NCBI GenBank assembly: GCA_965202585.1
Contig: OZ241828.1
Location: forward strand, 27,838,001 to 27,902,000
Origin: Thalia democratica
Taxonomy: Eukaryota
DNA length: 64,000 nt
Reading direction: 5' to 3'
The notes beneath the pieces are model-generated. The model worked only from the letters and a program-made list of their open reading frames with translations, had not been told where the DNA came from and ran no database searches. Each line of letters begins with the position of its first letter. The stretch's first letter is position 1. Shown one piece after another: positions 3,455 to 58,815 of the stretch. Both the position numbers and the translations under genes were made by a program.

Positions 3455-4990
3455 ATGGACCCAAACATGTTTTGTACAAACAAAGTTAGTAAAAATGAGT
3501 CTTCAGCAGTAAAAAATATAACTGCAAAAAAGGTTTTCTTATCAGAAAAGTTTGGTTATATAAAAAATCAATTAAAAAACCTGTCTCATTGGGCAAGGAA
3601 TTGGAATGATAAAAATGTTTGTATACTATCACCTTCTCAAAGGTTTTCTCAAATTAAAAGAGAACTTGAAGATTTGACCAATTTTATTGAGTCTAGCTCT
3701 AAAGAATATGAAAGAATACAGATCAGAGAAGAAATTAAAGATATTACTAAAAGTGTTGAAAAAGATAAGAGAGAAATAGCAACTCTCACTATAAATGTTG
3801 AAGAAAAAACAAAACTTATTTCTCACCTCAAAACAAAGTTGGATTTCCTCGAAGAAGATTCCAGCAGTGAGGACAGTAGTTCAGATAAGGGTGATAGTAG
3901 TAGTGATGACTATAGTGAACATACTGAATACATTAGTGATGGAGACAACGATGATGATGATCATAAGAGTCACGAAAGTAGTAGTGACGAAAGTAGTGGT
4001 GATGATAACAATGGTGGCAATAATGATGAAGACACTGAATATAGTGATCATGAAAGTAGTAACATTGATGAAAATGATAATAAGGATAGTGTTGGAAGTA
4101 GCAGTACATGCAAAGATGGTTACAGTGATAACAGCAGTAAAGATAAAATTACTGAATCCAACGTTTCAGAAGATTATTACACAGGTGGTAGTGATGATAA
4201 TGATGAAAGTACAGAATACAGTATTGATGGTAGCAGTAATGATGAAGGTGGTTTTTATAAGGATACTGTTGGGAATAGTACACAAGATGAAGGTATGAGT
4301 GAACATGTAAACAATGTTGAAGATGATAATGTTAATTCTTATAACCATAATGAAAGTTATGACAATGATTTCTTAATTGATTTTCCTTTAGCTTTAGGCT
4401 GTAGCGATAATAAAAACATTAAAGATAGCGGCAATAAATATAATGATAAAGATGATAAATTTAATTTATTTTTAAATAATCAACCTATCAGTTATAAAGA
4501 CAGTATTATTAAAGAAAGTAGAGATTTTGGGAAAATTCCGCCCAAAATGTTGTTTCAAATTAAAAAGCAGGCCAGGCTAGAAAAAAAAGTGTCCTTGATA
4601 AAAGAAGCTTTTGCATCGAGCTGTGAAGATTCTGCTTATAATGAAAGTTCAATTTCTAGCGACGATCCTTTTTCAACAATTAATTTGTTTAAAAACAAAA
4701 ATTTTGTGGCTCTAAAGCTCCTTGTAAAGTGTAAACTCCAGCACATTCAGACAAATGCCGAGATATTAGTTCAAATTCTCGATCATGAAAACCTGGTAAA
4801 AATGCCATCGCCAGAAAACAGCTTGCTTGTAAGTCTTATTAAAGAAAGTGGTTGGCTAAGTGCTACTTATAAAAAGTTAAAAGATCTATACAAAGATTTG
4901 GGTTACGGTGATTTTGATATTTCTGAAACAGACGCCAATGGTGATAATGACGTCAATAGTGACGCAGATGATAACGTGTATGATAAATAA
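3455..4990 (+). CDS. Intronless Ser/Asp/Asn-rich acidic protein, copy A (511 aa), unknown family
   Basis: 1.5-kb open frame in very AT-rich DNA. N-terminal ~135 aa (coiled-coil-like) and C-terminal ~130 aa are conserved with the paralogue at 15724, with only in-frame indels between them. No domain recognised. Confidence 0.85.
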   Translation: MDPNMFCTNKVSKNESSAVKNITAKKVFLSEKFGYIKNQLKNLSHWARNWNDKNVCILSPSQRFSQIKRELEDLTNFIESSSKEYERIQIREEIKDITKSVEKDKREIATLTINVEEKTKLISHLKTKLDFLEEDSSSEDSSSDKGDSSSDDYSEHTEYISDGDNDDDDHKSHESSSDESSGDDNNGGNNDEDTEYSDHESSNIDENDNKDSVGSSSTCKDGYSDNSSKDKITESNVSEDYYTGGSDDNDESTEYSIDGSSNDEGGFYKDTVGNSTQDEGMSEHVNNVEDDNVNSYNHNESYDNDFLIDFPLALGCSDNKNIKDSGNKYNDKDDKFNLFLNNQPISYKDSIIKESRDFGKIPPKMLFQIKKQARLEKKVSLIKEAFASSCEDSAYNESSISSDDPFSTINLFKNKNFVALKLLVKCKLQHIQTNAEILVQILDHENLVKMPSPENSLLVSLIKESGWLSATYKKLKDLYKDLGYGDFDISETDANGDNDVNSDADDNVYDK

Positions 4991-15723: not shown

Positions 15724-17388
15724 ATGGACCGAAACATGTTTTGTACAAACAAGTTTAGTAAACGTAAGTCTTCGGCAGTAAAATGTCCAAATCCTAAAAA
15801 CATTTTCTTATCACAAAATTTTGCTTATATAAAAAAGCAATTAAATGATATGTCTCACTGTGCAAGAAATTGGAATAATAAAAGTGTTTGTGTTTTATCA
15901 CCTTCTCAAAGATTTTCCGAAATAAAAAGGCAACTTGAAGACTTGACCAGTTTTGTTGAGTCTAGCTCTAAAGAGTATGAGAGAATAAAGATCAAAGAAG
16001 AAATTGAAGACTTTACTAAAAGTGTTGAAAAAGATAAGAGAGAAATAGCAACTCTCACTAAAATCGTTAAAGAAAAAACAAAACTTATTTCTCACCTCAA
16101 AACAAAGTTGGATTTTCTCGAAGAAGATTTCAGCGGTGAAGACAGTAGTTCAGATGATAGTAGTAGTGATGATTATAGTGAACATACTGAATACATTAGT
16201 GATGGAGACAACGATGATGATGATAAGAGTCACGAAAGTAGTAGTGACGAAAGTGGTGGTGATGATAACAATGGTGGCAATAATGATGAAGACACTGAAT
16301 ACAGTGATGACGAAAATAATAGTAATAATGATGAAAACGATAATTATTATAATGATGACAAGGATAGTGTTGGAAATAGTAGTACATGCAGTGATAATAG
16401 CAGTAAAGATAAAATTACTAAATCCAACGGTTCAGAATATTATTACACAGGTGGTAGTGATGATGATGATGAAAGTACGGAATACATTAGTGCTGGTAGC
16501 AGTAATGATGAAGGTGGTTTTTATAAGGATTCTGTTGGAAATAGTATACTAGATGAAGGTATGAGTGACAATGTAAATAATGTTGAAGATGATAAAGATA
16601 ATTTTGATAACCATGATGTTAGTAATCACAATGATGATTTTAGTAATGTTAACAGTTCTGGTGACAGTGAAAACACTAAAGATAGCAGCAATAAATATAA
16701 TGATACAGATTACAAATTTAAAAATGATAAACTTATCAGTGGTAAAAACACTACTGTTAAAGAAAGTAAAGATTTTTGTACAATTCTGCACAAATTCCGC
16801 AGAGTATTGTTTGAAACTAAACAAAAGGCCAGGCTAGAAAAAAAAGTTTCCTTGATAAAAAAATCTTGTCCATTGAATTGTGAAAGTTCCCCTTTAAGTG
16901 AAAGTTCTACTTCTAGTGAAAGTTCTGCTTCCAGTGATAGTTCTACTTCTAGTGAAAGTTCTACTTCTAGTGAAAGTTCTACTTCTAGCGAAAGTTCTAC
17001 TTCTAGCGAAAGTTCTACTTCCAGTGATAGTTCTACTTCTAGCGAAGAATCTTTTTCAACAATCAACTTGATTAAAAACAACTTGATTAAAAACAACTAT
17101 GTTATGGTTCTAAAGCTCCTTATTAAATGTAAACTGAAGTCCATTCAGACAAATGCTGAGATACTAGTTCAAATTCTCGATCACGAAAACCTGGAAAAAA
17201 TGCCATCGCAAGAAAAAAGCTTGCTTGTGAGTCTTGCTGAGGAAAGTGATTGGCTCACTGCCACTTCTAAAAAATTAGAAGATTTGTTCGAAAAATTGGG
17301 TTATGATGATCTTGATGTTTCTGAAACTGACGTCAATGGTGACGATGACGTCAATAGGGGCACAGATGATGACGTGTGCAATGAATAA
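15724..17388 (+). CDS. Intronless Ser/Asp/Asn-rich acidic protein, copy B (554 aa), unknown family
   Basis: Paralogue of 3455..4990 with shared blocks such as LSPSQRFS, KSVEKDKREIATLT, KTKLISHLKTKLDFLEED, ARLEKKVSLIK and IQTNAEILVQILDHENL. Same AAACATAAAAATGGA start context. Confidence 0.85.
   Translation: MDRNMFCTNKFSKRKSSAVKCPNPKNIFLSQNFAYIKKQLNDMSHCARNWNNKSVCVLSPSQRFSEIKRQLEDLTSFVESSSKEYERIKIKEEIEDFTKSVEKDKREIATLTKIVKEKTKLISHLKTKLDFLEEDFSGEDSSSDDSSSDDYSEHTEYISDGDNDDDDKSHESSSDESGGDDNNGGNNDEDTEYSDDENNSNNDENDNYYNDDKDSVGNSSTCSDNSSKDKITKSNGSEYYYTGGSDDDDESTEYISAGSSNDEGGFYKDSVGNSILDEGMSDNVNNVEDDKDNFDNHDVSNHNDDFSNVNSSGDSENTKDSSNKYNDTDYKFKNDKLISGKNTTVKESKDFCTILHKFRRVLFETKQKARLEKKVSLIKKSCPLNCESSPLSESSTSSESSASSDSSTSSESSTSSESSTSSESSTSSESSTSSDSSTSSEESFSTINLIKNNLIKNNYVMVLKLLIKCKLKSIQTNAEILVQILDHENLEKMPSQEKSLLVSLAEESDWLTATSKKLEDLFEKLGYDDLDVSETDVNGDDDVNRGTDDDVCNE
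16897..17040 (+). repeat. In-frame 18-bp minisatellite, 8 units encoding S(E/D)SS(T/A)S
   Basis: Unit AG(T/C)GA(A/T)AGTTCT(A/G)CTTC(T/C). Essentially one equivalent unit in copy A. Confidence 0.95.
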
Positions 17389-18469
17389 AGTCCCAATTGC
17401 AAAAGTGATTGTTATTTAAAAAAGATACATACATTTCTTTGACAGAGTACAGAATCTTTTTGTATCTTATTATCAATGTTAACTACAATAAAAACTAATG
17501 CATAAATAACTTTGAACATTTATATTACAGTTTTTAACAATTGATTTACAATATTCTTATCTTAATAAAATTTCTAAACCTTTTTTTACTAGTTTATATT
17601 AATTTAAAGTTTCTTTACTAAAATTGTTTGGATAACAATATTTTTTTACAAAAATTAACCTCAGCAGTATTAAAGATTTTAAAATTGACGAGTTAAAAAA
17701 CATTACTAACTGGTTATATATTTTTTGTTTAACTTGCTATGTCTAAAATAAATGCATTATATTTATGCAGATAAGACTGTATTTAGTATTTCTTTTTATA
17801 TGGTACAATGATATTTATGGTAAATTGATAGAAATGTATTACTTATTTACAATAAAAAGTAGTTTTAATTTAACAACAAAATGTTATTATTTTCATGTTT
17901 TGAATTTTAAATTTTCCAACAGTTTTATACTAAAACAAACTGTGGTAGTCAATATTTTTTTTAAATTCCTATCTTTTATATAAGGTAGATTTTTACTAGT
18001 GATCAACAAAATTTATTAATTAGATTTTTTTCGGATCTCTGTTGAAACTTGATTTCAGATTAATTTTTTTTAATCTTGATAGCAGAACTTTTACTCTTCT
18101 TTTGCCGCAGTTCGCAATCTTAAGTTGTAATCTGTTTAGAGTTGTTAAACTGTTTTTTAAGTAATAATTTCTCAAAAATTAGTAATCAATCAATTTTTTT
18201 TTATTATTTAAAAAGTTTTAAACTTCTATATATTTTAACTAAGAATCACCAAACTAAAAATAAGTAATTTGTAAATTCAGAAACAACTATTACGTTTATG
18301 GTACCAGCAATATTTTTTAAGGTTAATTTAAGTTTCGAGTTTGTAAGAAAACAATTAGCTAAAATTGCATTAACTTTATTATTGGTATCTTTAAAATTTA
18401 AGTAACAAAAATAGTAGTTATAAAATTCCAGTTTAGACAGGATGATAGAACTAAGGTAATAAATTGATA

Positions 18470-24504: not shown

Positions 24505-25100
24505 AAAATATCTTTAAACTTAACAAGAAATTTTAAGTAGACTAGTGCAAGCCATTAAAAAAATTACTATAGGCAGTATACATGCATTAGTAATATAAAT
24601 AAGTTGTTTTTTAAACATTTACTTTTTTATATAAACCATTATAAATTTTTTATGTGATTTTTACAACAATGTGTTACAAATTAACAAAAAATATCAAACA
24701 GTTATGTGCAAGCCAGAAAAAAATTATATACAGGTATTTATATTGCTACTTATAAATAACAGTTTTTCTACAGACCAATGTAATTTTCAAACCAATAATA
24801 ACGTTACAAACCTTTATTGCTGACTGCCATTTCATAGATACAAATGTAATTATAATTATTTTTAATGTAAACTTTCATCAGTATGTTACAAACGTTGCAA
24901 GAACTTTCTAGCAGACTTGTGCAAGTCACTAAAGCTAGTTATTATAAATAACTTTCATACATTAGTAATATAACTTAGTTGATATTTAAATAATTAACTA
25001 CTTTTCTCACAGACAAATAAAATTTTTTAATGTGAGTTTTACCAAAATCTGTTACAAACCTTGCAAGAATTACAAAGCAGACTTGTGTAAGCCAGCAAAA
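24505..25100 (+). repeat. Four degenerate copies of the NERD exon-1 start (acceptor plus first codons)
   Basis: Copies at ~24510-24554, 24669-24716, 24870-24926 and 25049-25096 of (ATG)TTACAAACGTTGCAAGAACTTTCAAGCAGACTTGTGCAAGCCAG. Confidence 0.9.
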
Positions 25101-25142
25101 ATTAGTATACCAATGTTGCTACTTATAAATTACTATTTTTCT

Positions 25143-25334
25143 GGTGTACTTCAAATTCCAACCTGATCAAATCCTACTTAAGCACAATTGCAACCTAAAG
25201 TTTTTTTCCTTTATTTGTATACTTTTTTTTACTTTATTTTTCACTACCACCGTAACCCCTTACCCTTGGTAAGTAAGCGGTTCTTGTATTTGATCAGGTG
25301 GTAGTTGATTGTAGGTTGAAACTGAGCAGTTCCC
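25143..25334. mobile_element. Small MITE in the NERD upstream echo array
   Basis: Inverted ACCTGATCAAAT / ATTTGATCAGGT, flanked by ATTTTTCT/GTTTTTCT. The paralogous unit at ~24760 is empty. Confidence 0.6.
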
Positions 25335-25453
25335 GTTTTTCTACAGACCAATGTACTATTCAAACCTATAAGAATGTCACAAATATTTATTGCTGACTGC
25401 TATTTCACAGATACAAATGTAACTATATTTTTTTAATGTAAACTTTCATCAGT

Positions 25454-25623
25454 ATGTTACAAACGTTGCAAGAACTTTCAAGCAGACTTGTGCAAGCCAG
25501 CATAGTGGACAAACCAAACAATCACAAGGAGAATGAAGCAGTTAGAGCTGGCAGGCAGGCTGAGAAGAATGTTGAGGATATGTTGGTTCAACTGGGTGGT
25601 ATACCAGCTTACAATGTTTTCAG
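25454..25623 (+). CDS. NERD-domain protein, coding exon 1 of 5
   Basis: MLQTLQELSSRLVQASIVDKPNNHKENEAVRAGRQAEKNVEDMLVQLGGIPAYNVF(R). ATG lies 1 nt after an acceptor-like ACTTTCATCAG. Donor AG|GTAGCC, phase 2. G..AE..V...L is the typical NERD N-terminal helix. Confidence 0.8.
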
Positions 25624-25852
25624 GTAGCCTTACTATTTTATATATATTGATTTTAAAATGTATGAAATATTTTACTAAGTTAAATATTTTGTCTTATTAA
25701 TCTTTGTTTATGTGTGTCCGCTGTTAATGTTCTTATTTAAGTTTTTTTTTTCATAATTTGTCTATAATTTTTGAAGTATATAGAATTCTGTTTTAAATAA
25801 AAAATAAATAGTACTTTGATTTAAACTTGGAGTTTATGTGTTTATTTTCTAG

Positions 25853-26450
25853 TTCAACGTGGTAAATGTTTGTGCAGTTGGGTAGCATTGCTGCATATAA
25901 TGTTTTCAGGTAACTGTTTTTGTACAAGGCAAAAATTAGTAAAAGTTATTCATCTTCTTTTCGTAATTGATATTTATATGTTTGTTATACTTAAATATTT
26001 ACATTTATTTATGATTATAACCCAGTATTTTAGTCTTTTTCATAAGTCAAACTGATTATGTTACAAATTACTGCAGTTTCAGTTTCTTTTTTTATTTAAC
26101 TAATATGTATTTTTCATCCTTTTTTTAATTTATTTTAATCCTTTTTAGTATGGCACATTTATTTTTTAATTTGTTGTTTTGTTTTTTTCTTTTAACATAA
26201 TTAAAAGTGTTTTATATCAATGCAGATGGCATTCAGCTTGCAATGTGTTTTCAGGTTTGATTGTTTATTTTTTTGTATGAATGTACTTTTTTTATCATTT
26301 TTGAAGTTTGTATAAATCTGTTTTGTATCAACACTAAACAATATTTTGATTTAAATGTAGTGTTTTTATTTATATTTTCATAATTGAATTCAAGATGGTA
26401 AATGTTAATTAATGGGTGGCATCTATGCTTATTATGTATAGAGGTTAGCG
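25853..26450 (+). repeat. Degenerate copies of the NERD exon-1 end plus donor
   Basis: ~25866-25915, ~26220-26258 and ~26390-26447 resemble ...GGTGGTATACCAGCTTACAATGTTTTCAG|GT. Confidence 0.8.
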
Positions 26451-27299
26451 TAATTATTTAACATTTCAGTGTATACCATGGCTTTCCAAACTCATTATCC
26501 TAGCCTATAACTAGTCAGATAATGAAAAAATACTTGCCCATATTTACTAATTTAGCTATTCATTTACATTTTTTGATCTTTATTAAGGAGGCAAAATTTC
26601 AAACTTTTAAAACTCTGTTATTTTTGGTTATTTTTTTTATTACTTATTGAAGTTGTAAAGTTGTTACTTTTTTGTTTAAGTTCTTATGTATATTTTAATT
26701 TTGATACAATTTAAACATAAATGACAATTAGTATTAGTAGTGCCTGTTTTTAACGTAATTTTTGTTTATTTTATTTTGTAAACTTAATTTTTAACTTGAA
26801 GTTGTATAGCAGATTGTTATTTAAATTTAAAGTTTTTAATATTAAAATATTATACATAAGTTTTTCTCATAGCAAACCTGCTTAAGTACTTTTATTAGCA
26901 TTTAATTTCAAAGTAAAAAATAAAAATGTACAAATGAAGTTTGTTTAAACTTTAATAAGTTTTATTTTTAAAGCAATATGTTTAAAATCGTGTAAATTAA
27001 ACTTTGTTCGATGACTTGTTTGTATGACTTATATTTCTTAATGTGATATTTTCAGGTTTTACATAATAACTAATTTAAGTATTAATTTTTAAACAACTTT
27101 TTATTGTGAATAAGTCATATTAAGAAACATTACATATATTTTAAAACCAATGTATGTTTTTATTTTTGAATTTTTATAACTTTTATTTTGTTTAATATAG
27201 TTAAATTTTAAATGTTGTAGGTGTTCATTAACGTCGGCTTTTTTATGTAAGCATGAAGTACAAAATTACATTATGTTTAAAGTTTATTCAGGTTTTCAA

Positions 27300-28260
27300 A
27301 GTGTTTCCAAAAAAAAAAAGGACCTAAGGCCATAGGGGGTTTAATTTTTTTTTTACATTTACATAACAGCTTAAAAACTATGAGAAGTAACTACAAGTCA
27401 GGTTTTGTAGAATTGAAGGAAATAACAATTTTTTGAATAATTTTGATTTTTTCTTAAGCTTTCAGTGCAAAAGTATGGACCTCAGTATCTTTAAGGCCAT
27501 AGGGATATTAATCATGTTTTTTACAAGTTGATTTTATTTTATAAAGTTTTTTCTAAGTTTCAAGATATTTTTTTATTGTTTTAAAAAATTCAAATTATTT
27601 TTTGAGATATGACCAGTCAAAGTCGGGCAGCATAATAGGTTCCCTATTGTAAGGGAAAACTAAAACAGCAAAAAAAAGACTATTATATTTAAAATCTATC
27701 TCTTCCTACATTTTTAAAGCAATATTTTTCAAATTTTTATAATCTAATCTTTATACAATAACAAAAAAAAAAACAAAAAACATTACTTTGGACTTTAAAA
27801 AATTTCAAAGATTTTTTTTTTTTAAACAAGACAAACTTTTTTAATAAAATATAAACTACTAAAATTAATAAGTAACATTTTTTTCTTTTAGTATAAGAAA
27901 CTTTTCCTGAAAGTTTGAAGTAGATTGGTTGAAAAATGAAGGAGGAAATAGATTTTAGTGATATTTAAAATTTCCAAGAAAATTGAAAGTGAAAAATTTT
28001 CGATCCATACGTTTGTATTGCAAAATTTTTACACAAAATAAAATACCTCAAAACATAAATGATATTTTTGAGCTCTATGAAAACTTGCTTATAGTTTGTT
28101 CTTACAACTTTTATATAAAAGCCAAAGTTAATTTTTGTAAAAAAAATGTTGGACCTCCTTATGGTTTCAGAAAATTCTAATGAACTTGAAACTTAATTTT
28201 TGAGCTGAAATTTTCAGAAAACAATCCATTTGTAGTTTAAAACACCTTGATTGTTGTAAT
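27300..28260. mobile_element. Probable non-autonomous DNA-transposon relic in NERD intron 1
   Basis: Block slightly richer in GC with repeated GGACCT..AAGGCCATAGGG motifs (~27320, ~27478) and GGACCTCCTTATGG (~28151). Termini not resolved. Confidence 0.35.
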
Positions 28261-28270
28261 TAAAAATTAT

Positions 28271-28642
28271 TTTCACACAGATCACTCCGCATACCCAAAC
28301 CAACTGCAAACAGAGGTTCACTGAAATATTAAATCATTATTTTAACACAAATATATCTTGATTTGATGTTATTGTTAGAAAATTATTATTTTTATTCAGT
28401 AGAAGTGAATTAAGAAATCACTCTGTATTCCAAGTTTAGTATATAGTTATTGATATTAGACTTGGTATAGTTTAGTGTCAATATTTTTGATGAAAATAAA
28501 ATCCCACACAGATCCGCACACCTGACCAACTGCAATTAAATTTTTTTAGTACTGTAATATTTAGATAATATTTATTTTTTAAATTTTTATCATTAAAATA
28601 AGTTTTTCACACAGTTCACTTCGAATACCCAACGAACTGCAA
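28271..28642 (+). repeat. Three degenerate copies of the NERD exon-2 acceptor plus start
   Basis: 28271-28311, 28503-28535 and 28604-28642 match CAG|ATCACTTCGCATACCCAACCAGTTGCAA. Confidence 0.9.
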
Positions 28643-28724
28643 TTAAAATTTTTGGTATTATGTATTTTTTTAATGATATAATATTTTGATACTGTTGCCT
28701 TCTAAAACAAATATTTTTTTACAG

Positions 28725-28917
28725 ATCACTTCGCATACCCAACCAGTTGCAAACTGGAAGGAGCGAAATTGACCTTGTGGTGATAACCGACCACCAAATT
28801 TACTGCTTGGAAGTTAAGAATTGGAGTGGAAATATAAGGATGTCTTGCAACAATATATACTGGGATCAGACTGTTAAAAGGGACGGAAGGACCAAAGTTA
28901 TACAGCACATGTGCCCT
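28725..28917 (+). CDS. NERD-domain protein, coding exon 2 (catalytic core)
   Basis: TTTTTACAG acceptor; SLRIPNQLQTGRSEIDLVVITDHQIYCLEVKNWSG...QHMCP; donor GTAAGT. EID...EVKNWSG is the NERD / PD-(D/E)xK signature. Phase 2 in, phase 0 out. Confidence 0.9.
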
Positions 28918-29004
28918 GTAAGTGTTTGTTTTTTAAAATAAATGTTAAATTGTGCTGATACTATGTTGTGCATTGTCTGCTTATTTGGTGTTTCAATTTA
29001 TTTT

Positions 29005-29204
29005 AGCATACGTGTCCAGTTAATGTTTGTATTTATAATATTTTTTTTTACTTTAAAATACAAATCTATGCAATATTTATAATTTATTTACTACTAACTT
29101 GCAATTTATTGATAGCACTGTTAGTTTTTATACCATTGTACTTTCAAACTTTTTTTCTGTTAAAATTGATTAAAGTTATATATCATATGTGCCCTACAAG
29201 TTTT
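29005..29204 (+). repeat. Two degenerate copies of the NERD exon-2 end plus donor
   Basis: 29005-29030 AGCATACGTGTCCAGTTAATGTTTGT and 29172-29204 AAAGTTATATATCATATGTGCCCTACAAGT, versus exon AAAGTTATACAGCACATGTGCCCT|GTAAGTGTTTGT. Confidence 0.75.
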
Positions 29205-30167
29205 TTTATTGTTTACTTAAAATTTTATATATATATATATATGTTTAAGGATGCTTTTCTGATAATAACATTTTCAATGAATATAGTCTCAAGTATGCTT
29301 TTTGTGAGAAACTCAAGAAGTGCCTTCATGAGACTTTTTTCAAATCGTCTTAAAACGTGTAGAATATGTTTCTGTGATAGTTACTACATGTAAAAAATTT
29401 GAACCAAAAACTTGAAAGTCGAATTTTTTAGGTCCTATACAATTAATTAGAGTTGTTTTCAGAAAAAAAAATATTTCGCTTCTACTAACGCTTCTTTAAA
29501 TAATCTAAAATATTGCTCACGGTGTTTTAAGTGATGTTTGCCAATCTTAATTCTTTTTCAGCTTAAATTCAAGAGTAGCCGTTTTGTTAAGCTAATGTGT
29601 ATACTTGATAAGCAATGTGGGATATTTTGTTTTAAAATGATAGTATTTTATTGTTTATGCTGAACACAGTTTTATTTACATAAGAATGTTATTTTTTTTT
29701 CTCTACTCAACAAAGTTCTAGGTAAATAAATATGAAATATAAAGCCTTACAAAAGCTTTTAAATAGTGTACAAAACCATTTGACATAACCAAAGTTACTG
29801 AAGTTATTAATTAAACATTGTTCGGAGTTGCATATTTTAAATATACTTAGTTCTATTTTCAGATAACTTAACTTTAAAGATTAATTTATAACTCAGACAA
29901 ATCTATTTGCTAAAATTGCTCAAAATCCTTTTTAGACCTTTTTGAATTTACTTATTTATTTTACTCAGCCTAAAAGCAATTAAGCTTAATTTAAAAAGTC
30001 TGGAGCATTATTGGCAATCAAAAAGCCTGCTTAATCTGTAATGAGTATTTTTAACTTTTTAAATTTGTTTTTTGACAAACATTTAATTTTAATAGATTTA
30101 AAATTTAGAAATATAAGTTTTTAATTAGATACAACAGGCTAATAAAAATTCTTAAACTTTTTTTTAG

Positions 30168-30409
30168 ATCCGGAGCATTGTGGATAAAACTGCCCTCCTT
30201 AGATCCCACTTTGCACGTAATGGAGTTTTTATTCCGGGAAAATCCCTACTTTCCCGCGTTGTCATGGTGAACAGCAACGGGGAGCTGGACCCCAGCATAA
30301 CAACCAGCGATACTGTGATCACCCCCCAGCAACTGAAAGATTTCGCGGGGAAATTTCAGAAGCCAATTAGCAGTTACTTGTTAGATCCATTTGTACCTTT
30401 CTTTTTGGG
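30168..30409 (+). CDS. NERD-domain protein, coding exon 3
   Basis: Poly-T-AG acceptor; IRSIVDKTALLRSHFARNG...SRVVMVNSN...LLDPFVPFFL(G); donor GTGAGT. Phase 0 in, phase 2 out. Confidence 0.88.
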
Positions 30410-31171
30410 GTGAGTTTTTTTCCTAAAATACTGAAAAATTGTTTTCCTACAATTGTTTTATAAGATTTTGAATAAAAACTGCTCAACTTATATATGTAGT
30501 TTTTAAATTTTTATGACTCAAGGTTTTTGGCTTTAGGTTGAGATTAAGCTGAGCTAAATGTTATAGATTATTTTGTAGTTTTAAAAGAGTTATACATAGT
30601 TTAATGTGCTAAACACTTTTTAATATTTAAAGTAGTTTTAAAGAATGATTTTCAATACTTTCTAAAAAAGTAATGGACTCATTTAATTTTATTTAGATTG
30701 ATTGTTAATTAAATTTTTAAAACTTACTATAAATTTAATGACAAAAAATTTATAAAGCCTTCTGAATATGGAATCTGCAAGGTAACTTTCATGAGGTGTT
30801 CTATGTTTTTTAATTGATTTTTTGTTTTGTTTATTTTGGTGATTTACTCTAATCAACTTATTTTATTTTAGTTTTCTTTTAACAATAAATTTACCTTAAC
30901 TTGCTTATTTTACTGATATAGTTTTTTTGTTTAATTGAGTTTTTTTATGTTGAAAGAAAATAACTAAATTTGAAATAAAGTAATTTTAGGTGTTATGTTG
31001 ACTTTAATGTTTTTTTTTGTAGTTTTTTGAACATAAGTCTTATTATACTAAATACATAAAAAGATTTTTTTTTAATTTTTAGATTTATACTTTTGGATTG
31101 AGAATACTTTAGTCTTTGATAATATTTATAATAAATTTTGTAATTGATTTTTCTCATAAACGTTTTAAAAA

Positions 31172-31790
31172 ATCTCACTACTCGCAATCAAGCTTAATTT
31201 GACAAATTCTAAGCTCCATAACTAATTATTTAATATTTAAAATACTTGTTATATTGAAAATAGTGATAGTTCGCAGAAATATAGTTAAAAAAATCTAATA
31301 AAATTTAATTAAAAAGTTGTAACTATATTACAGAAGCGCATTCAGCTTCTCGCAATTATAATTGATTCGTCAAATTCTCAACTCTGTAAAAATTAATTAG
31401 CAGTAATTATAATAAAATTAAAAGTTGTTTAAAATATAAATTTCTTAAACACTTTTAAATAAACAACTTACAAAAATAATTAATAAGTAATTATTATACA
31501 GATAAACATTCTCATACTCCAAACTAACCCAAAGTTCTCAACCATGTAGAAATTAAAATATTTAAAACATTTTATAAGCTCGAATAAATCTGTTTCAAGT
31601 CTTTAGTTTTTTTACAAATAGAGGAACTTTCTCACACTCCCAACTTAGTTTGATCTGCCAAATACTTAACTCTGTAATTATTATTTGTTGTAAAAATAAT
31701 AATAATTAAACAAACTTCTAAATAGCTATTACTATTCTTCAATTTTAAATAAATACGTTCTCATACTCCCGACTTAAAGTAATTGATTAG
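31172..31790 (+). repeat. Five degenerate copies of the NERD exon-4 acceptor plus start
   Basis: ~31172, 31326, 31496, 31615 and 31755, spaced ~120-170 bp, each resembling AG|AGGGACATTCTCATACTCCCAATTATCATTGATCCGTCAAATACTCAACT. Confidence 0.9.
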
Positions 31791-31894
31791 TAACAATAAT
31801 AGTAAATATAAAAATAATAGCAGTAGTGATGATAACAAATTGTCCTAAACATTGTTTATTACATAAAGACAAAATAAAATAACTATTTCCACAG

Positions 31895-32106
31895 AGGGAC
31901 ATTCTCATACTCCCAATTATCATTGATCCGTCAAATACTCAACTGCGTGGGAACTTGGGACGTTTGCGAACTGGAAGGAGGCAAGATGCTGCACGGCGAC
32001 TTCAAACAATTTGATTGTGACGTCACCGTGAGCAGGAAGAACTGTGACGTCATAGAGTTCAACCACAACAGGAACGACGCCATGGCCTCTTTGTGGGCGT
32101 TGATGG
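31895..32106 (+). CDS. NERD-domain protein, coding exon 4
   Basis: TTTCCACAG acceptor; GTFSYSQLSLIRQILNCVGTWDVCELEGGKMLHGDF...MASLWALM(G); donor GTTGGT. Phase 2 in, phase 1 out. Confidence 0.85.
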
Positions 32107-32378
32107 GTTGGTTGAAAATATATACTTTTTATTTAAAAAACTCAAGCTGGAATAAGTTTAATATATATTGTAAAGTTATCCAATTCATTCTAGGTTATTA
32201 TAAAAAAAATTTAATAAAAGAACAAAAACGCGATGTAAATAAAAAACTAGTTTTATAGAATGCTTCAATTCTTTATTCTGGTTATTAATATTTTGTTTAA
32301 TTTAGTCGTATAACTTATTATATTATGTCTTTTTATATTTATGCTGTAAGTTTTTAATTGATTGTTACTCAATTTTAG

Positions 32379-32602
32379 GTTATTCCCCAACAACAAAAGT
32401 TCGAGCACTCGCCAGATTTGATAGTAACCAATCGTCATGGTTACCTGCGTCACTGGACATTACGTCATGGTTGCTGGGCAAGCAGGTTGTCATGGAAACC
32501 AATGTAAAGTTCACGAGTCACGTCAAGTTCAGGATTGCTGGCGACAGAGTCGATTCGAAAATACAAGTAAACGACATAAAGAAAATTACGCTGAGTTTGT
32601 GA
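32379..32602 (+). CDS. NERD-domain protein, coding exon 5 (stop)
   Basis: TTTTAG acceptor; (G)YSPTTKVRALARFD...VKFRIAGDRVDSKIQVNDIKKITLSL*. Spliced CDS 170+193+242+212+224 = 1041 nt = 346 aa plus stop, with all phases compatible. Confidence 0.88.
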
Positions 32603-35600
32603 AAGACTTAGAAGTAATTTTGAAAACAATACTTTGTAAGGTTTCTTAAAAAAAACATATTATCATTTGTTTTTTATACAAAGAATTACAAATTTTGTTA
32701 AGACTTTAAGAAAACAACTTATGGACTATCAAAAAACTTACCCGAGTTGGTGAATTGGAATACTAAAAGATACAATGATTTCCCTTATTTCAGTTTCAGA
32801 AAAAAATGTTCGCACAGAAACATATAGTTGCAATATACAAAGTAGGAACGCCTATAAATACACTATAAGTATAAAGCATCTAATTTAGTCGCAATATTTG
32901 GCCAAGTTTCTATTTTTTAACCTGTGTTCAGTTTTTTTCCATTCCTGTTATGTCTAAATATGAAAAGTTTAATTTTTTTTTTTAAATTTGTGTTTCCATA
33001 ATGCTTACAAAGCATTCAATAAAACTTTTTCAATTTCCGAAGATTTTGTTATTATTTTTTTACATTTCTATCAAATTACTGTTTATTCCAGGTATAAAGT
33101 TTTTGCTCTTAAGTGTTTTACTTTATAGCGCGAAAAAAGAAAACTAGTTTGAATACATAAATTTTACTTGATTTTAAAGTTTTCTGTAAGTTGCCATAAG
33201 TTTGAAACTGGTATTGCTTATTTGTATTTTTCGTTAGATATTTTTTTAAGGTTAAGGTTTTATAACAGTGTTATTTTTTTTCTATGATGTTTTAAATTAA
33301 GTGTATTCCATTAAATTATTGTTATTTCCAAAAATATATTTTAGCTCCAAACACTTATGATTCGTGACATAAAATTGTACATGCATAAAGATTCCCTAAT
33401 ATTTTTTGCCAAGTTTGTCATTAACGTTAAAAACTTTTTTTTTGAATAATTTTCCGTAAACTAAAATATAGTTTTAAACATTCTAGTGCTGTTTTTCAGT
33501 CATTGTTAACAATATCGTTTTATAGATCAAATAGTTTACTAAAGCTATTGTTTGAAATTAAGTTTAAACTTAAGTTTAGTTGAAAAATAATCGAAATTTT
33601 GGATAAAAGTTAATGAGTTTTTAGTAATTTTGTTTCGCTGTTTGTATATAAAATACGATTAGCACAACTATTATAACATCATTGATTAAAATTTTATGTA
33701 TGTAAAAAAAAGTTGTAATAAAAAATATATATGCTTTGGTTTTCTAAAAATTAAAAATATTTGAAAGATGCTGTTACTACAATTAATTATCTTTTACTTA
33801 TTTTTAATTTTTCTGTATCAGAAAACATTAAATCAACAAACATTTGTAATTTTATTTACCTACCTAAGTGCATATTTACATCTGTTTAAAGTTTTTTTTT
33901 TAAAGCATCATATTAACTTAAAAAATAGTAACTTTGATATATAGTTGAAGTACAGTTTGAAAAACTAAAAGAAAATTATATACCGATACTGCTTTTGAAA
34001 ATGTTTTTATAAACATCATTATTGTGTTTTGCCTAATACATTTCATCTATTGCCTTTTAATAGTTGGGTGCCTCTAATTTCTTGTAAATAATTTAACTGC
34101 CTGTTTTGTCTTATTCATTGTAAACATATTTCCTTTTTTGGCCAAAAGTTGTCTTTGAAATTTTGTCTTTAAAAATAATAGTTTTATTTTTGTTGTTTTG
34201 TGCCTTTAGCATTGAAAATAAAATAAGTTATATTGAGTTTTTATTATATTCTAATTAATTAATATTACACTTGCAATCTTAGATTTATTTTAAAATAAAT
34301 ATGACAATTTTTTTTCCATTAAATATCAGAATAACATAACAACTATTTAGATTTATTTAAAGTATAACTCAGCTTACTATTAAAAGTTTCTTTAGAAAAC
34401 TTCTTGAATAAAATGTTCAAACTTTCCATATGTATAAGTTGTACCTAAAATGGTAATTAGTATAAAAACAGTTGAAGTTTAGTATTCAAAACTAGAGTAT
34501 GTAATTTTTTAAATTTTATTTTAAAATATGGAAAAAAAAATCTAAATAAATTATTAAACTTGTCAGTATTAAGCTAAGTTAGCTGTTTTGATAAAAATAG
34601 CACGAAGTATAAATATTCACTATTTAATTAGATTTAAATTTTCCTTATGTTAATTTTTAAAACTAGTAAAATGTTATATCCAAAAAGTTTATAAAATATA
34701 TCAACAATAAAATAAAAGAGGCACGTAATATAAAACCTATTGTACTAAGCATTTTAAATAATTCTTATATTAACATAAAAAGCTTTATAAAACACTCATT
34801 AGTAAAATTAGTTATATTATTAGCTGCATTTTAAACGTCATTCGTGACTCATAATACTTAATTGTGACTAACAGTTTTCAAGTATTATGAAAGCGTGAGT
34901 AAACAGTTACTGAATATAAGTTTAATTATTTTTTTGTGAAATATTTTTACACAAGCTGATTGCATATTTTGTTGAACTTCATGAATTTTGCCCTTGTTGG
35001 TAGTGTTTGTAAAAAAAGTACAAAAATAACTAACTTTTGTTCAGGTGCTAAATTTAAAAACATACTGATGACACAAAACTAAATGCTGCCTGTTAAATAA
35101 AGTGACATTGACAGGTATAAGTAAACTACAAAGACTAAAACATTAAATTAAAAAAACTAATAACAAAATTTTCATAAGTTATTACAAACTTGAGGGAAAC
35201 AACGTTGAAATTGTATAATTTTAAGTACAAGTTTTTGAATAAACTTGCTACACTATAACTTCATTTATGAAGGGAACAACATCTAACAATATGTCTTTGA
35301 AAATTTCATCATTAAATCTGTAGAATATAGTTTAGAAGTAGTGCATTATCTTATTTACTCACATACAATAAATTTTACAGTTTAAAATTTAATGCATACT
35401 AGTGCAGAGTTTTCTCTTTCATGTAGGCTCTTAATCTTTATTGATTTATAATGATGGAACTAAAGATAGTGTAGTACTTTAATAAAAACTATTTTTTTTA
35501 ACACATTTTTACCAAACTAAATTTCGCCCAAAGAACTTGTCAGTGCATTGTATAGAGTTTTTTTTTACAGAGTTACAATACTATATCAAATTATCCTTAA

Positions 35601-35837: not shown

Positions 35838-37125
35838 CAGATGACCACTTTGGAATACCACAAGGTTCTTGTTTGGGTCCTTTGTTGTTTCTTGTGTATA
35901 TTAATGATATTTTTTCCTCTACTGAGACAAATATGAGATTGTTTGCTGATGATGCCTGCTTGAGCTACCAACACAGTGATCCTGAGTGTTTAAATGAAAC
36001 TATTAATAAGGAGTTGGTAAAAGTTGATAAATGGTTGCGTGCTAATAAACTTTTTATTAATTATTCAAAAACTAAGTTTTTTTTTTTAATAAAACTTCAA
36101 AAAATTGTGAATTTAGTGTTAAGGTAAATGGTTTTCTTATCGAGCAGAGTAATAGTATAAAATACTTAGGTGTGGTTTTGAATGATAAGCTGAATTGGAA
36201 GAAACATTTGAGTTCTCTGAAATCGAAATTGTCTAGGAGTTGTTATGCTTTGTCAAAATTAAGATATTACTTGGACACATTTACACTTAAAATGGTATAT
36301 TATAGTATGTTTTATTCGCATATCCAATATTGTATATCTGTTTGGGTTAGTGCTGCTGACTGTTACTTAAAACCAATTTTTTGTATGCAAAAAAGAGTGA
36401 TCAGGTATGTTTGTCGTGTGCCTGCCTTGACCACAACAAACCCTTTGTTTAAAAAAACTGGTGTGCTAAAATTAAAGGATGTGTATAAATTGCAAATTTG
36501 TAAGTTAATGCGTAATACTATAACAGGGTTTGATGTAGAACACAATAGATTTACACTTACTAGCTCTGTTCACCTACACAATACAAGATTTTCAAAGAAA
36601 ATGAATTTTACAACTGAAAGACCTAGAACAAGACTTGGCCTAAACTGCTTTAGGTATTTGGGTCCCAAGTTTTGGTCTAGTGTCCCTGAAACTTTTAAAA
36701 ACTTAAAAAAAGATCCATTTAAATTTATATATAAAGACTTTTTGTTGAATAACTACATGGAGTAGATCTAGAGGGCTTCTACATGTATGTTTTGTCTGTG
36801 TTAAAATTTGATTCATGTAATTTGGGACCAGATTGTGATGTGTTGGTCTTTATTTTTATGAATGTCCTGGTAATGAAAGAGTGATTGTTATAAATTATTG
36901 TAATAAATTTTGTTTATTGCTAGGTTGTCTTACTTGTTTCAATTTTTTTATTGTGTTAGATTTAAGATAGTTCATTTATTTATATTTTTTTATTAGAAAT
37001 TAGAGGTAAAAGTATAAACTTAATACAACTTTTTTATTTGTTTATTATTTTTTTTTCTTTTTGTTTTTTTTGAGTCTTGTACAAAGATAATATGTACTAA
37101 CAAATTTTAAAAAATCTTATTATTT
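35838..37125 (+). mobile_element. 5'-truncated CR1-group non-LTR retrotransposon (RT C-terminal half plus 3' UTR)
   Basis: FGIPQGSCLGPLLFLVYIND...LFADD...KTK; frameshift in the T-run at ~36080; then KYLGVVLNDKLNWKKH...YYSMFYSHIQYCISVW...GPKFW. The 3' boundary is approximate. Confidence 0.9.
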
Positions 37126-45670: not shown

Positions 45671-46647
45671 ATCTATAATTAAGACAGACGGTGGCAATTT
45701 TGTAAATTTATGCAAAAATAAATCTAAAAAACCTTTTGTTTTGGAGAACAGGTTAAAAAGTAAGTATTTATTTATTGTTTTGTTTTATAAATTATAAAAT
45801 TTCATGATGATGCTGCTTTTTTTTTATATGAATAGTTTAAATTTTTCTTAACTTTATTATTTTAACAATTGAGCTAATAAAATAAAATTGTGAGTTTAAG
45901 TGAACAAAATAGATTTTATTTTCAAGTATTAATTAATATAACAGTTTATAAAATTTTTTACTAAGAATTTCTAGTATTACTATATCAAAATATTTGCTTT
46001 TAAGATGTGCTTGTGGTCAGCTAATCATAAAAAGACAATCGTATGATACAGTTAACATTTATTGGGTCTATGCTAAAAAGATTGTTTACCAACGCTTTAA
46101 ATCTTACTACCAGCACTTTCAAAAAAATAAACTAAATGATTATTTTTAAACAACAGACCTGTTTAACGAAAACGAACTTGTCGAGCAAATTAGGACGAAC
46201 AAGCTGAATTTAAGCGATGAAGTGAACAGAAAAACTGCGTCGGAGTTACCAGAACTGAATGGTGGAAACGAGGCGGTGATAAATGAAGTAGCACGCGTTT
46301 TCATCTTCGGGAAATCCCTCAAGCTCAAGATTGCTAACGACAAAAAGATGCTTAAGATTGCTAATGACAAAACAAAAATAATATTTTTCTACAACAAATA
46401 TGGCGAAAAAATATTCGAAAGAATTATTGTGACAGCATAAAAGATTATTGATACTTTATTAAAATTATTAAAAGAAAAATAGAGTGAAATGCGAAATCGC
46501 ATTTATTTTACCTTAACTAACTAAATAAAAAAACAAAAAAAAAAACAATGTAAAAACGTTTACTAAATGGTTCGCAATTTTTTTCTGTTCTAAAAGAAAA
46601 TGTATTCTCAACATCACAAAAGTTAATATTTTTCACTGTTTGTTTTT

Positions 46648-58451: not shown

Positions 58452-58815
58452 TTAAACAACAGACCTGTTTAACGAAAACGATCTAGCCGAGCAAATTAGG
58501 ACGAACAAGCTGAATTTAAGCGATAAAGTGAACATTAAAACTGTGTCGGAGTTACCAGAACTGAATGGTGGAAACGAGGCGGTGATAAATGAAGTGGCAC
58601 GCGTTTTCAGCTTCGGGAAATCCCTCAAGCTCAAGATTGCTAACGAGAAAAAGGAGCTTGAGATTGCTAATATAGAAAAGATATTAATACGTCTAAAGAG
58701 GAGCTCTTCAAAAAACATCCCAAAAAATCTATCAAAAAAACTCGCAATGCGAGATGTAAAATTAAAACAGTTAAAAGAAAAAATAAAAAGCGAAATTGCA
58801 TTTTCTTTACCTTAA
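58452..58815 (+). pseudogene. Basic coiled-coil coding relic (paralogue 46146-46440), probably TE-derived
   Basis: ELPELNGGNEAVINEVARVF.FGKSLKLKIAN is conserved in both array copies. Copy 1 has a deletion or frameshift. Confidence 0.4.

What the first reader, a model, noticed from the sequence alone, without database searches (positions are those of the whole stretch)
24505..31895. Exon-edge echoes: NERD splice junctions are trailed into the introns by arrays of decayed copies of themselves
Seen: at five boundaries (exon 1 start x4, exon 1 end x3, exon 2 start x3, exon 2 end x2, exon 4 start x5; exon 3 start weakly x1) the intron side holds tandem, ~100-400-bp-spaced copies of the splice site plus 25-60 nt of adjoining exon. 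Acceptor echoes always lie upstream and donor echoes downstream, so the live exon stays intact. Many echoes keep their AG or GT. Inference: recurrent short tandem duplications spanning a junction are tolerated because the innermost site is used, and they build intron sequence from exon edges. The echoes could also act as decoy or alternative splice sites. I know of no named description of this, but cannot exclude one.
Basis: partly seen in the sequence, partly recalled or inferred. Interest (0 to 1): 0.85.

Follow-up and report, generated by a model that had tools for sequence, protein, structure and literature searches.

The report
Tandem repeat ladders at exon borders
Five borders of a five-exon NERD nuclease-like gene in an AT-rich marine animal genome are flanked by small tandem arrays whose innermost unit is the live exon edge; they look like neutral relics of border-spanning duplications, yet they make up about 38% of the gene's intron DNA.

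Summary
At five borders of the NERD gene (5' end of exon 1, exon 1 donor, exon 2 acceptor, exon 2 donor, exon 4 acceptor), 15 echoes score above every one of 43 non-adjacent control stretches. All lie on the predicted side, against one marginal wrong-side hit. The exon 3 echo is not significant.

RNA contigs confirm all four introns and show only the innermost sites in use.

Each ladder is a locus-specific tandem array with one fixed breakpoint in the exon. That fits one founding duplication followed by array growth, not repeated independent events. All five arrays are shared with an intact, expressed paralog 146 kb away, so they are old. Copy number still differs: 5 against 7 echoes at exon 4.

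Old echoes diverge between the paralogs exactly as fast as the spacers (0.870 against 0.866 identity). They are neutral relics, not conserved decoys.

In about 240 kb of other loci, similar ladders exist in dynein and myosin genes at about 1.6% of exon edges. That is roughly what background tandem duplication predicts. What remains unexplained is clustering within genes: 5 of 9 edges here and 3 of about 20 in one myosin gene.

First-stage readers noted the same pattern in other windows of this genome; those notes are unverified. The closest known case is the human F7 intron 7 minisatellite.

The parts
25409..25623 (+). NERD gene exon 1 (first exon; ATG at 25454)
   Evidence: RNA contig of run X3 is collinear over 25409-25620 and joined to exon 2. 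The ORF runs from 25454.
28725..28917 (+). Exon 2, the NERD catalytic core
   Evidence: Joints 25623|28725 and 28917|30168. Pfam NERD PF08378, E = 5.4e-12.
30168..30409 (+). Exon 3
   Evidence: Joints. An 84%-identical fragment occurs on a marine metagenome contig.
31895..32106 (+). Exon 4
   Evidence: Joints 30409|31895 and 32106|32379.
32379..32602 (+). Exon 5, coding part (stop codon at 32600-32602)
   Evidence: Joint. The spliced CDS of 1041 nt gives 346 aa.
24516..25502 (+). Nested tandem array over the promoter, 5'UTR and first 46-49 coding nt. Copies at 24516-24554, 24672-24716, 24743-24928 and 25015-25097; the live copy ends at 25499-25502.
   Evidence: D1, D2, D4, D9, D10; 186 nt at 86.6% identity, offset 573; 259 nt at 71%, offset 374; 4 hits above the null maximum.
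25580..26445 (+). Exon 1 donor array: the live edge 25580-25623 plus echoes at 25866-25912, 26222-26258 and 26390-26445. The intron stretch 25754-25849 is repeated at 26284-26379.
   Evidence: D5, D12, D13, D15; (3 hits).
28250..28754 (+). Exon 2 acceptor array: echoes at 28262-28311, about 28500-28540 and 28594-28642. All end at exon position +28/30.
   Evidence: D7, D19; (2 hits above the strict threshold).
28894..29210 (+). Exon 2 donor array: echoes at 28995-29033 and 29172-29210
   Evidence: D8; 1 hit above the strict threshold.
29995..30045 (+). Candidate exon 3 acceptor echo; not significant
   Evidence: Best score 10 against a null maximum of 12.
31165..31944 (+). Exon 4 acceptor array: echoes at 31173-31215, 31320-31383, 31485-31526, 31620-31671 and 31755-31798. 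Where the 3' end is preserved, they end at exon position +50/52.
   Evidence: D3, D6; (5 hits); codon table.
27450..28250 (.). Very high-copy dispersed repeat inserted in intron 1; not part of the ladders
   Evidence: Word depth in DNA run X1 is 1.5e5-4.9e5, against about 100-400 nearby. It is shared with paralog B at 87% identity.

Best explanation
Each ladder is a small tandem array found only at this locus. Units are about 100-360 bp, and some nest into 370-570 bp higher-order units. The innermost unit straddles the border of a live exon.

Each array began with one duplication of a segment that crossed the border. That segment carried 24-52 nt of exon at the splice sites and about 90 nt at the 5' end of exon 1. 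The array then gained and lost units by unequal exchange or replication slippage, including exchange with the live copy.

Only the copy contiguous with the rest of the exon gives an intact mRNA. The outer copies therefore sit in the intron or upstream DNA, which forces the observed polarity: acceptor copies upstream, donor copies downstream. The outer copies are unused pseudo-sites that decay at the neutral rate. As a by-product they have added about 38% of this gene's intron length.

Shown here: tandem structure, fixed breakpoints, polarity, use of the innermost sites, locus specificity, presence before the paralog split, copy-number turnover, and neutral decay of old echoes.

Inferred: the founding events, unequal exchange as the growth mechanism, and why the arrays cluster in this gene.
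For: - Significance and polarity: 15 same-side hits against 1 wrong-side hit.
- Intron stretches between echoes are repeated too, so whole units were copied: D4, D5, D9, D10, D14.
- One exon breakpoint per ladder, in both paralogs.
- Higher-order periodicity: in paralog B the echoes alternate TCA and AGT types every ~355 nt.
- Genome-wide DNA searches find the arrays only in this gene and its paralog.
- The paralog is collinear through the introns, so all five arrays predate the duplication. Copy numbers nevertheless differ: exon 4 has 5 against 7 echoes, exon 2 has 3 against 4.
- All four combinations of the variants at codons 2 and 4 occur among the B copies, which points to exchange among copies including the live exon.
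- Orthologous echoes and spacers have the same A-to-B identity, 0.870 against 0.866, while live exons are at 0.91-0.95.
- RNA shows only the innermost junctions, and paralog B is spliced the same way.
- The same arrangement occurs elsewhere in the genome: 144-nt donor units in two dynein paralogs; an 83-nt donor echo in another dynein gene; and in one myosin gene a 29-nt x3 donor repeat, a 245-nt donor duplication that doubled an intron, and a 360-nt acceptor echo.
Against: - A random model does not explain the clustering. About 1.6% of control exon edges carry a strong same-side echo (6 of 377), against 5 of 9 edges here and 3 of about 20 in one myosin gene.
- The excess of local copies stops at the gene's borders: 28% of 60-nt queries are positive inside the locus against 8.6% outside.
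- The exon share of a unit is always under half (about 0.06-0.35), which is shorter than random breakpoints would give.
- The four young echoes in paralog B differ from the live exon by 13 nucleotides, and none changes the peptide. One difference is a TCA/AGT serine switch. Plain neutral decay does not predict this.
- The control genes are conserved motor and kinase genes with short introns. They may not represent genes with long introns.
Confidence: 0.62

Rival explanations
1. Targeted mutagenesis. Exon borders in some transcribed genes are hot spots for short tandem duplication. For example, staggered breaks could form where GC-rich exon meets AT-rich intron, at R-loop or nucleosome edges. 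The ladders would then reflect raised mutational input at junctions, not random events seen through a filter.
For: - Ladders cluster within genes: NERD 5 of 9 edges; myosin gene at C7:4868002 3 of about 20; pooled controls 6 of 377.
- The excess of local copies is confined to the gene body.
- NERD has no multi-copy array in 2.5 kb of intron interior, although intron-derived parts of the junction arrays are detectable on their own.
- In the controls, all 6 strong echoes lie on the same side and none on the wrong side.
Against: - In pooled unselected loci the share of edges with ladders (1.6%) matches what background predicts. That estimate uses about one strong array per 15 kb of non-exonic DNA, a unit of about 150 nt and a two-fold visibility gain.
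- None of about 60 ends of intronless kinase genes has a ladder.
- This gene was picked because of the pattern.
- No breakpoint motif was found.
Confidence: 0.2
2. Function. The echoes are kept as decoy or poison splice sites, or as alternative terminal exons, that tune NERD expression. A 52-nt echo exon would shift the reading frame and trigger NMD.
For: - Most echoes keep AG or GT.
- Several exon 4 echoes are followed by GT at +52.
- The young echoes in paralog B keep the 16-residue peptide intact.
Against: - No RNA joint at any echo in four RNA data sets; depth over the arrays is 0-3 against about 400 in exons.
- Old echoes evolve at the spacer rate between paralogs.
- Older echoes carry stop codons, indels and lost AG/GT.
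- Retention of the splice dinucleotide is no higher than the 75-90% local identity predicts.
Confidence: 0.07
3. Leftovers of whole-exon tandem duplications, that is, decayed mutually exclusive exon clusters.
For: The exon 4 echoes have an AG and often a GT, and they share one length.
Against: - Only one edge of each exon is copied, and similarity ends sharply at +24 to +52 in every copy.
- 52 nt is not a multiple of three.
- The live exon has no acceptor at +52.
- No such isoform appears in the RNA.
Confidence: 0.03
4. Artefact or mobile element: the assembler expanded a repeat, or a transposon carrying captured exon pieces was inserted.
For: The DNA is AT-rich and repetitive. DNA run X1 may come from the same sample as the assembly.
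Against: - Units differ by 5-30%, so they are not collapsible copies.
- Short-read contigs cross unit borders without a mismatch.
- The arrays are present, with differences, in the paralog.
- They occur nowhere else in the 802-Mb genome.
Confidence: 0.03

Closest known systems
Human F7 intron 7 minisatellite (37-bp VNTR whose first unit spans the exon 7 donor; PMC1557585)
   Same: It is a head-to-tail array whose innermost unit contains the authentic splice site. The outer units carry pseudo-sites of the same sequence that stay silent, and the exon-proximal site is the one chosen. The 29-nt x3 donor repeat in the myosin gene is almost a copy of this design.
   Different: - The NERD units are 100-360 bp and diverged by 5-30%, not near-identical 37-mers.
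- Acceptor borders and the 5' end of the first exon are affected as well as donors.
- Five borders of one gene carry arrays.
- The arrays make up about 38% of the intron length.
Intron gain by tandem duplication of an AGGT-containing exon segment (Rogozin model; PMC3265369, PMC2891723, PMC4974935)
   Same: A short tandem duplication involving exon sequence and splice signals is tolerated because splicing restores the original mRNA, and exon-derived DNA becomes intron.
   Different: In that model the new intron starts with a copy of the downstream exon and ends with a copy of the upstream exon. Here each echo copies the exon next to it, together with an existing splice site. The introns were already there and are lengthened, not created.
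Tandem exon duplication and mutually exclusive exon clusters (named from my own knowledge; not read here)
   Same: Exon-like copies with splice sites lie in the neighbouring intron.
   Different: Only 24-52 nt of one exon edge is copied, the copies are not frame-preserving cassettes, and they are not included in the RNA.
Short tandem duplications from repair of staggered nicks, described in plants (named from my own knowledge; not read here)
   Same: A general mutation class that makes duplications of tens to hundreds of bp. It could supply the founding events.
   Different: No link to exon borders has been described, and I did not test this repair mechanism.

Membership tests
Boundary-spanning minisatellite with pseudo splice sites (F7 IVS7 type) | Head-to-tail repeat units | tested here: met
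   Units and spacers are repeated in register. The units are far longer and more diverged than in F7.
Boundary-spanning minisatellite with pseudo splice sites (F7 IVS7 type) | The innermost unit contains the authentic exon border | tested here: met
   Borders are fixed by RNA joints, and the live edge aligns with every echo.
Boundary-spanning minisatellite with pseudo splice sites (F7 IVS7 type) | The exon-proximal site is used and the outer sites are silent | tested here: met
   Only the innermost junctions appear in RNA contigs. Contigs cannot show rare isoforms.
Boundary-spanning minisatellite with pseudo splice sites (F7 IVS7 type) | Copy number varies between alleles (VNTR) | not testable with these tools
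   Copy number differs between the paralogs. Allelic variation would need population long reads.
Intron created by tandem duplication of an exonic AGGT segment | The 5' end of the intron copies the start of the downstream exon, and its 3' end copies the end of the upstream exon | tested here: not met
   Exon edges match only the intron on their own side. Wrong-side searches found nothing apart from one marginal hit.
Mutually exclusive tandem exons | Whole-exon copies with both splice sites and a preserved frame, used alternatively | tested here: not met
   The copies are partial, 52 nt is not a multiple of three, and there are no RNA joints.
Transposon or introner-derived intron sequence | Dispersed copies elsewhere in the genome | tested here: not met
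   The arrays match only this locus and its paralog.
NERD (PF08378) nuclease-related domain (identity of the host gene) | Profile match above Pfam's cut-off | tested here: met
   Exon 2 alone scores 46.6 bits against a cut-off of 22.1, E = 5.4e-12.

The most novel reading that the evidence does not exclude
In this genome, exon borders of particular transcribed genes are hot spots for short tandem duplication. Junction ladders would then be a major route of intron growth. Exchange between the ladder and the live exon would also speed synonymous turnover at exon edges, as in exon 4, where 9 of the 19 differences between the paralogs fall in the first 30 nt and all nine are synonymous.
Probability: 0.15. 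Interest if true: 0.8.

Novelty: new variant of a known kind. Interest (0 to 1): 0.4.

Why it matters
This is a clear natural example of introns growing from copies of their own borders. About 38% of this gene's intron DNA can be traced to four border-anchored arrays.

The ladders also form a natural series of competing splice sites of known age and sequence. That makes them useful for asking why the spliceosome picks the exon-proximal site.

If clustering within genes proves general, it would point to a mutational process tied to exon borders or to transcription, and would make intron expansion directly testable. If it does not, the ladders are an ordinary by-product of frequent short tandem duplication in AT-rich DNA.

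Tried and rejected
- Transposon or gene-capture origin: rejected. The arrays match only the two paralogs.
- Distant paralogs as the source of the synonymous variant types: rejected. Only two copies exist even at protein level.
- Intron gain by exon-segment duplication: rejected. There are no wrong-side echoes.
- My own first impression that the exon-derived parts of echoes are sharply more conserved than the spacers: withdrawn. That alignment mixed spacer types that are not homologous. The clean comparison of orthologous echoes and spacers between paralogs gives equal identity.
- Codon-position bias of echo-to-live differences: 53/32/85 by position, and 67 synonymous against 60 non-synonymous codon changes. 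The bias is real. It is largely expected, because the live copy changes only synonymously and third positions are GC-richer in an AT-biased genome. I do not count it as evidence of function.
- The idea that ladders mark genes with close paralogs: not general. The myosin gene with three ladders has no close paralog.
- Sister-species comparison failed. The ORF-level protein search found nothing. The exhaustive search found only a 504-nt metagenome contig.
- A wider genome sample failed.
- Literature searches found single-locus precedents but no genome-wide description.
Full report
**The locus.** The window is about 25% GC. A five-exon gene lies on the + strand between 25.4 and 32.6 kb and encodes 346 aa. 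Exon 2 alone matches Pfam NERD at E = 5.4e-12. One public run (X3) behaves as RNA of the same organism and another (X1) as its DNA. Marine metatranscriptome runs and a further run (X10) carry close relatives. RNA contigs give the junctions 25623|28725, 28917|30168, 30409|31895 and 32106|32379. Exon 1 is the first exon: an RNA contig is collinear with the genome back to 25409, directly after a ttcacAG. First-stage notes elsewhere in this genome mention spliced leaders, so this could be a trans-splice acceptor, but I did not test that.

**Anatomy.** The stretches between echoes are repeated too (D4, D5, D9, D10, D14). Whole units of about 100-360 bp were copied, and some nest into 370-570 bp higher-order units. 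Every copy in a ladder stops at the same exon position: +50/52 for exon 4 and +28/30 for exon 2, in both paralogs. Each ladder therefore descends from one founding duplication across the border and then grew as an array. The arrays cover 2320 of the 6108 intron bases (38%).

**History.** A second intact gene copy lies 146 kb downstream (L001). It is collinear through the introns at 75-93% identity. RNA contigs carrying its diagnostic variants show that it is expressed and spliced at the same junction. All five arrays are present in both copies, so they predate the duplication. Copy number has changed since: exon 4 has 5 echoes in A and 7 in B, and exon 2 has 3 against 4. In B, four young exon 4 echoes alternate between a TCA and an AGT serine codon with a period of about 355 nt. 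All four combinations of the variants at codons 2 and 4 occur among the copies, live exon included, which implies exchange within the array. The two live exons differ at 9 synonymous sites in their first 30 nt and at only 10 sites in the remaining 182 nt. This fits an exon edge that was swapped for another array member.

**Are the echoes constrained?** I aligned A to B and compared orthologous segments. Exon-derived parts of echoes are 0.870 identical (581 nt), spacers 0.866 (2113 nt), intron interiors 0.81-0.89 and live exons 0.91-0.95. Old echoes therefore drift like any intron DNA. Echo-to-live differences are biased to third codon positions (53/32/85). Most of that is expected, because the live copy can change only synonymously and third positions are GC-richer in an AT-biased genome. 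One observation remains unexplained: the four young B echoes carry 13 differences from the live exon and none changes the peptide.

**Are the echoes used?** In four RNA data sets the only joints in 28200-32700 are the three annotated ones. RNA depth over the arrays is 0-3 against about 400 in exons. Contig data cannot exclude rare or NMD-degraded isoforms.

**Is it specific to junctions?** Inside this gene, yes. 28% of 60-nt queries have a local copy above their own null, against 8.6% in the rest of the window. The excess stops at the gene's borders, and the intron interiors sit at background.

In other loci of the same genome the picture differs:
- 114 kb around intronless kinase genes has about 9 mostly weak tandem arrays in non-coding DNA and none at a gene edge.
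- 60 kb around dynein exons has a 144-nt donor ladder shared by two paralogs and an 83-nt donor echo in another gene.
- 67 kb of myosin loci has about 8 intron-only arrays. One gene there has three border events: a 360-nt acceptor echo at 94-96% identity, a 245-nt donor duplication that doubled an intron, and a 29-nt x3 donor repeat.

Pooled across the dynein and myosin loci, 6 of 377 island edges have a strong same-side echo and none has a strong wrong-side echo. Background density is about one strong array per 15 kb of non-exonic DNA. With units of about 150 nt and a two-fold visibility gain, because only one of the two copies decays, I expect 4-8 such edges. Genome-wide, nothing beyond random tandem duplication plus geometry is needed. 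What random placement does not explain is the clustering: 5 of 9 edges here and 3 of about 20 in one unselected myosin gene. The exon share of a unit is also always under half, which suggests that long exon copies are removed because they compete in splicing.

**Comparison with what is known.** The arrangement matches the human F7 intron 7 minisatellite, whose first unit spans the exon 7 donor and whose downstream pseudo-sites stay silent (PMC1557585). It is not the intron-gain-by-duplication model (PMC3265369, PMC2891723), because the echoes copy the adjacent exon and not the opposite one. It is not a mutually exclusive exon cluster, and it is not a mobile element. Four literature searches found no genome-wide description. 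First-stage readers of this scan noted the same pattern in other windows of this genome. Those notes are unverified, and I could not fetch those places.

**Verdict.** These are old, border-anchored tandem arrays that decay neutrally and lengthen the introns, and they show no sign of function. They are a variant of a known kind. The open question worth following is why they cluster in particular genes.

Noticed in passing
G000:C4:28008001-28018000 (L001): Intact, expressed paralog of the NERD gene 146 kb downstream, with 11 amino-acid differences in the 341 residues compared. Identity between the copies is uneven: the exon 1 donor array is 93% identical, the exon 4 array 75%.
   Followed up: yes
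L001:8597-9357: Four young exon 4 echoes keep the 16-residue peptide intact despite 13 nucleotide differences, among them a TCA/AGT serine switch. An older echo shared by both paralogs has a second serine switch.
   Followed up: partly
window 27450-28250: Very high-copy dispersed repeat in intron 1. DNA word depth is about 1e5, against about 1e2 nearby. It is also abundant in the RNA and metatranscriptome runs.
   Followed up: no
L051:1-504 (marine metagenome contig): A relative with 84% amino-acid identity in exon 3 has an open frame running straight through the position of intron 2. That intron may be specific to this lineage.
   Followed up: partly
window 3780-4500 and 16110-17400; also 46213-46343 and 58542-58651: Two pairs of about 12-kb-spaced duplicated segments. 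One carries a long exon for an acidic Ser/Asp-rich protein with internal coding repeats.
   Followed up: no
L077:4100-4230 in merged coordinates (C7:4868002 myosin gene): A 29-nt unit repeated three times, starting at an exon donor. It is almost the same design as the human F7 intron 7 minisatellite. The same gene has an intron made of two 245-nt units.
   Followed up: yes
G000 C8:12-17 Mb, C8:53.5-53.8 Mb, C6:13.4-13.7 Mb: Large tandem clusters of intronless protein-kinase genes, with the whole Pkinase domain in one open frame.
   Followed up: no
window 35873-36127: Open frame resembling a reverse-transcriptase fragment of a non-LTR retrotransposon. This is judged by eye only.
   Followed up: no
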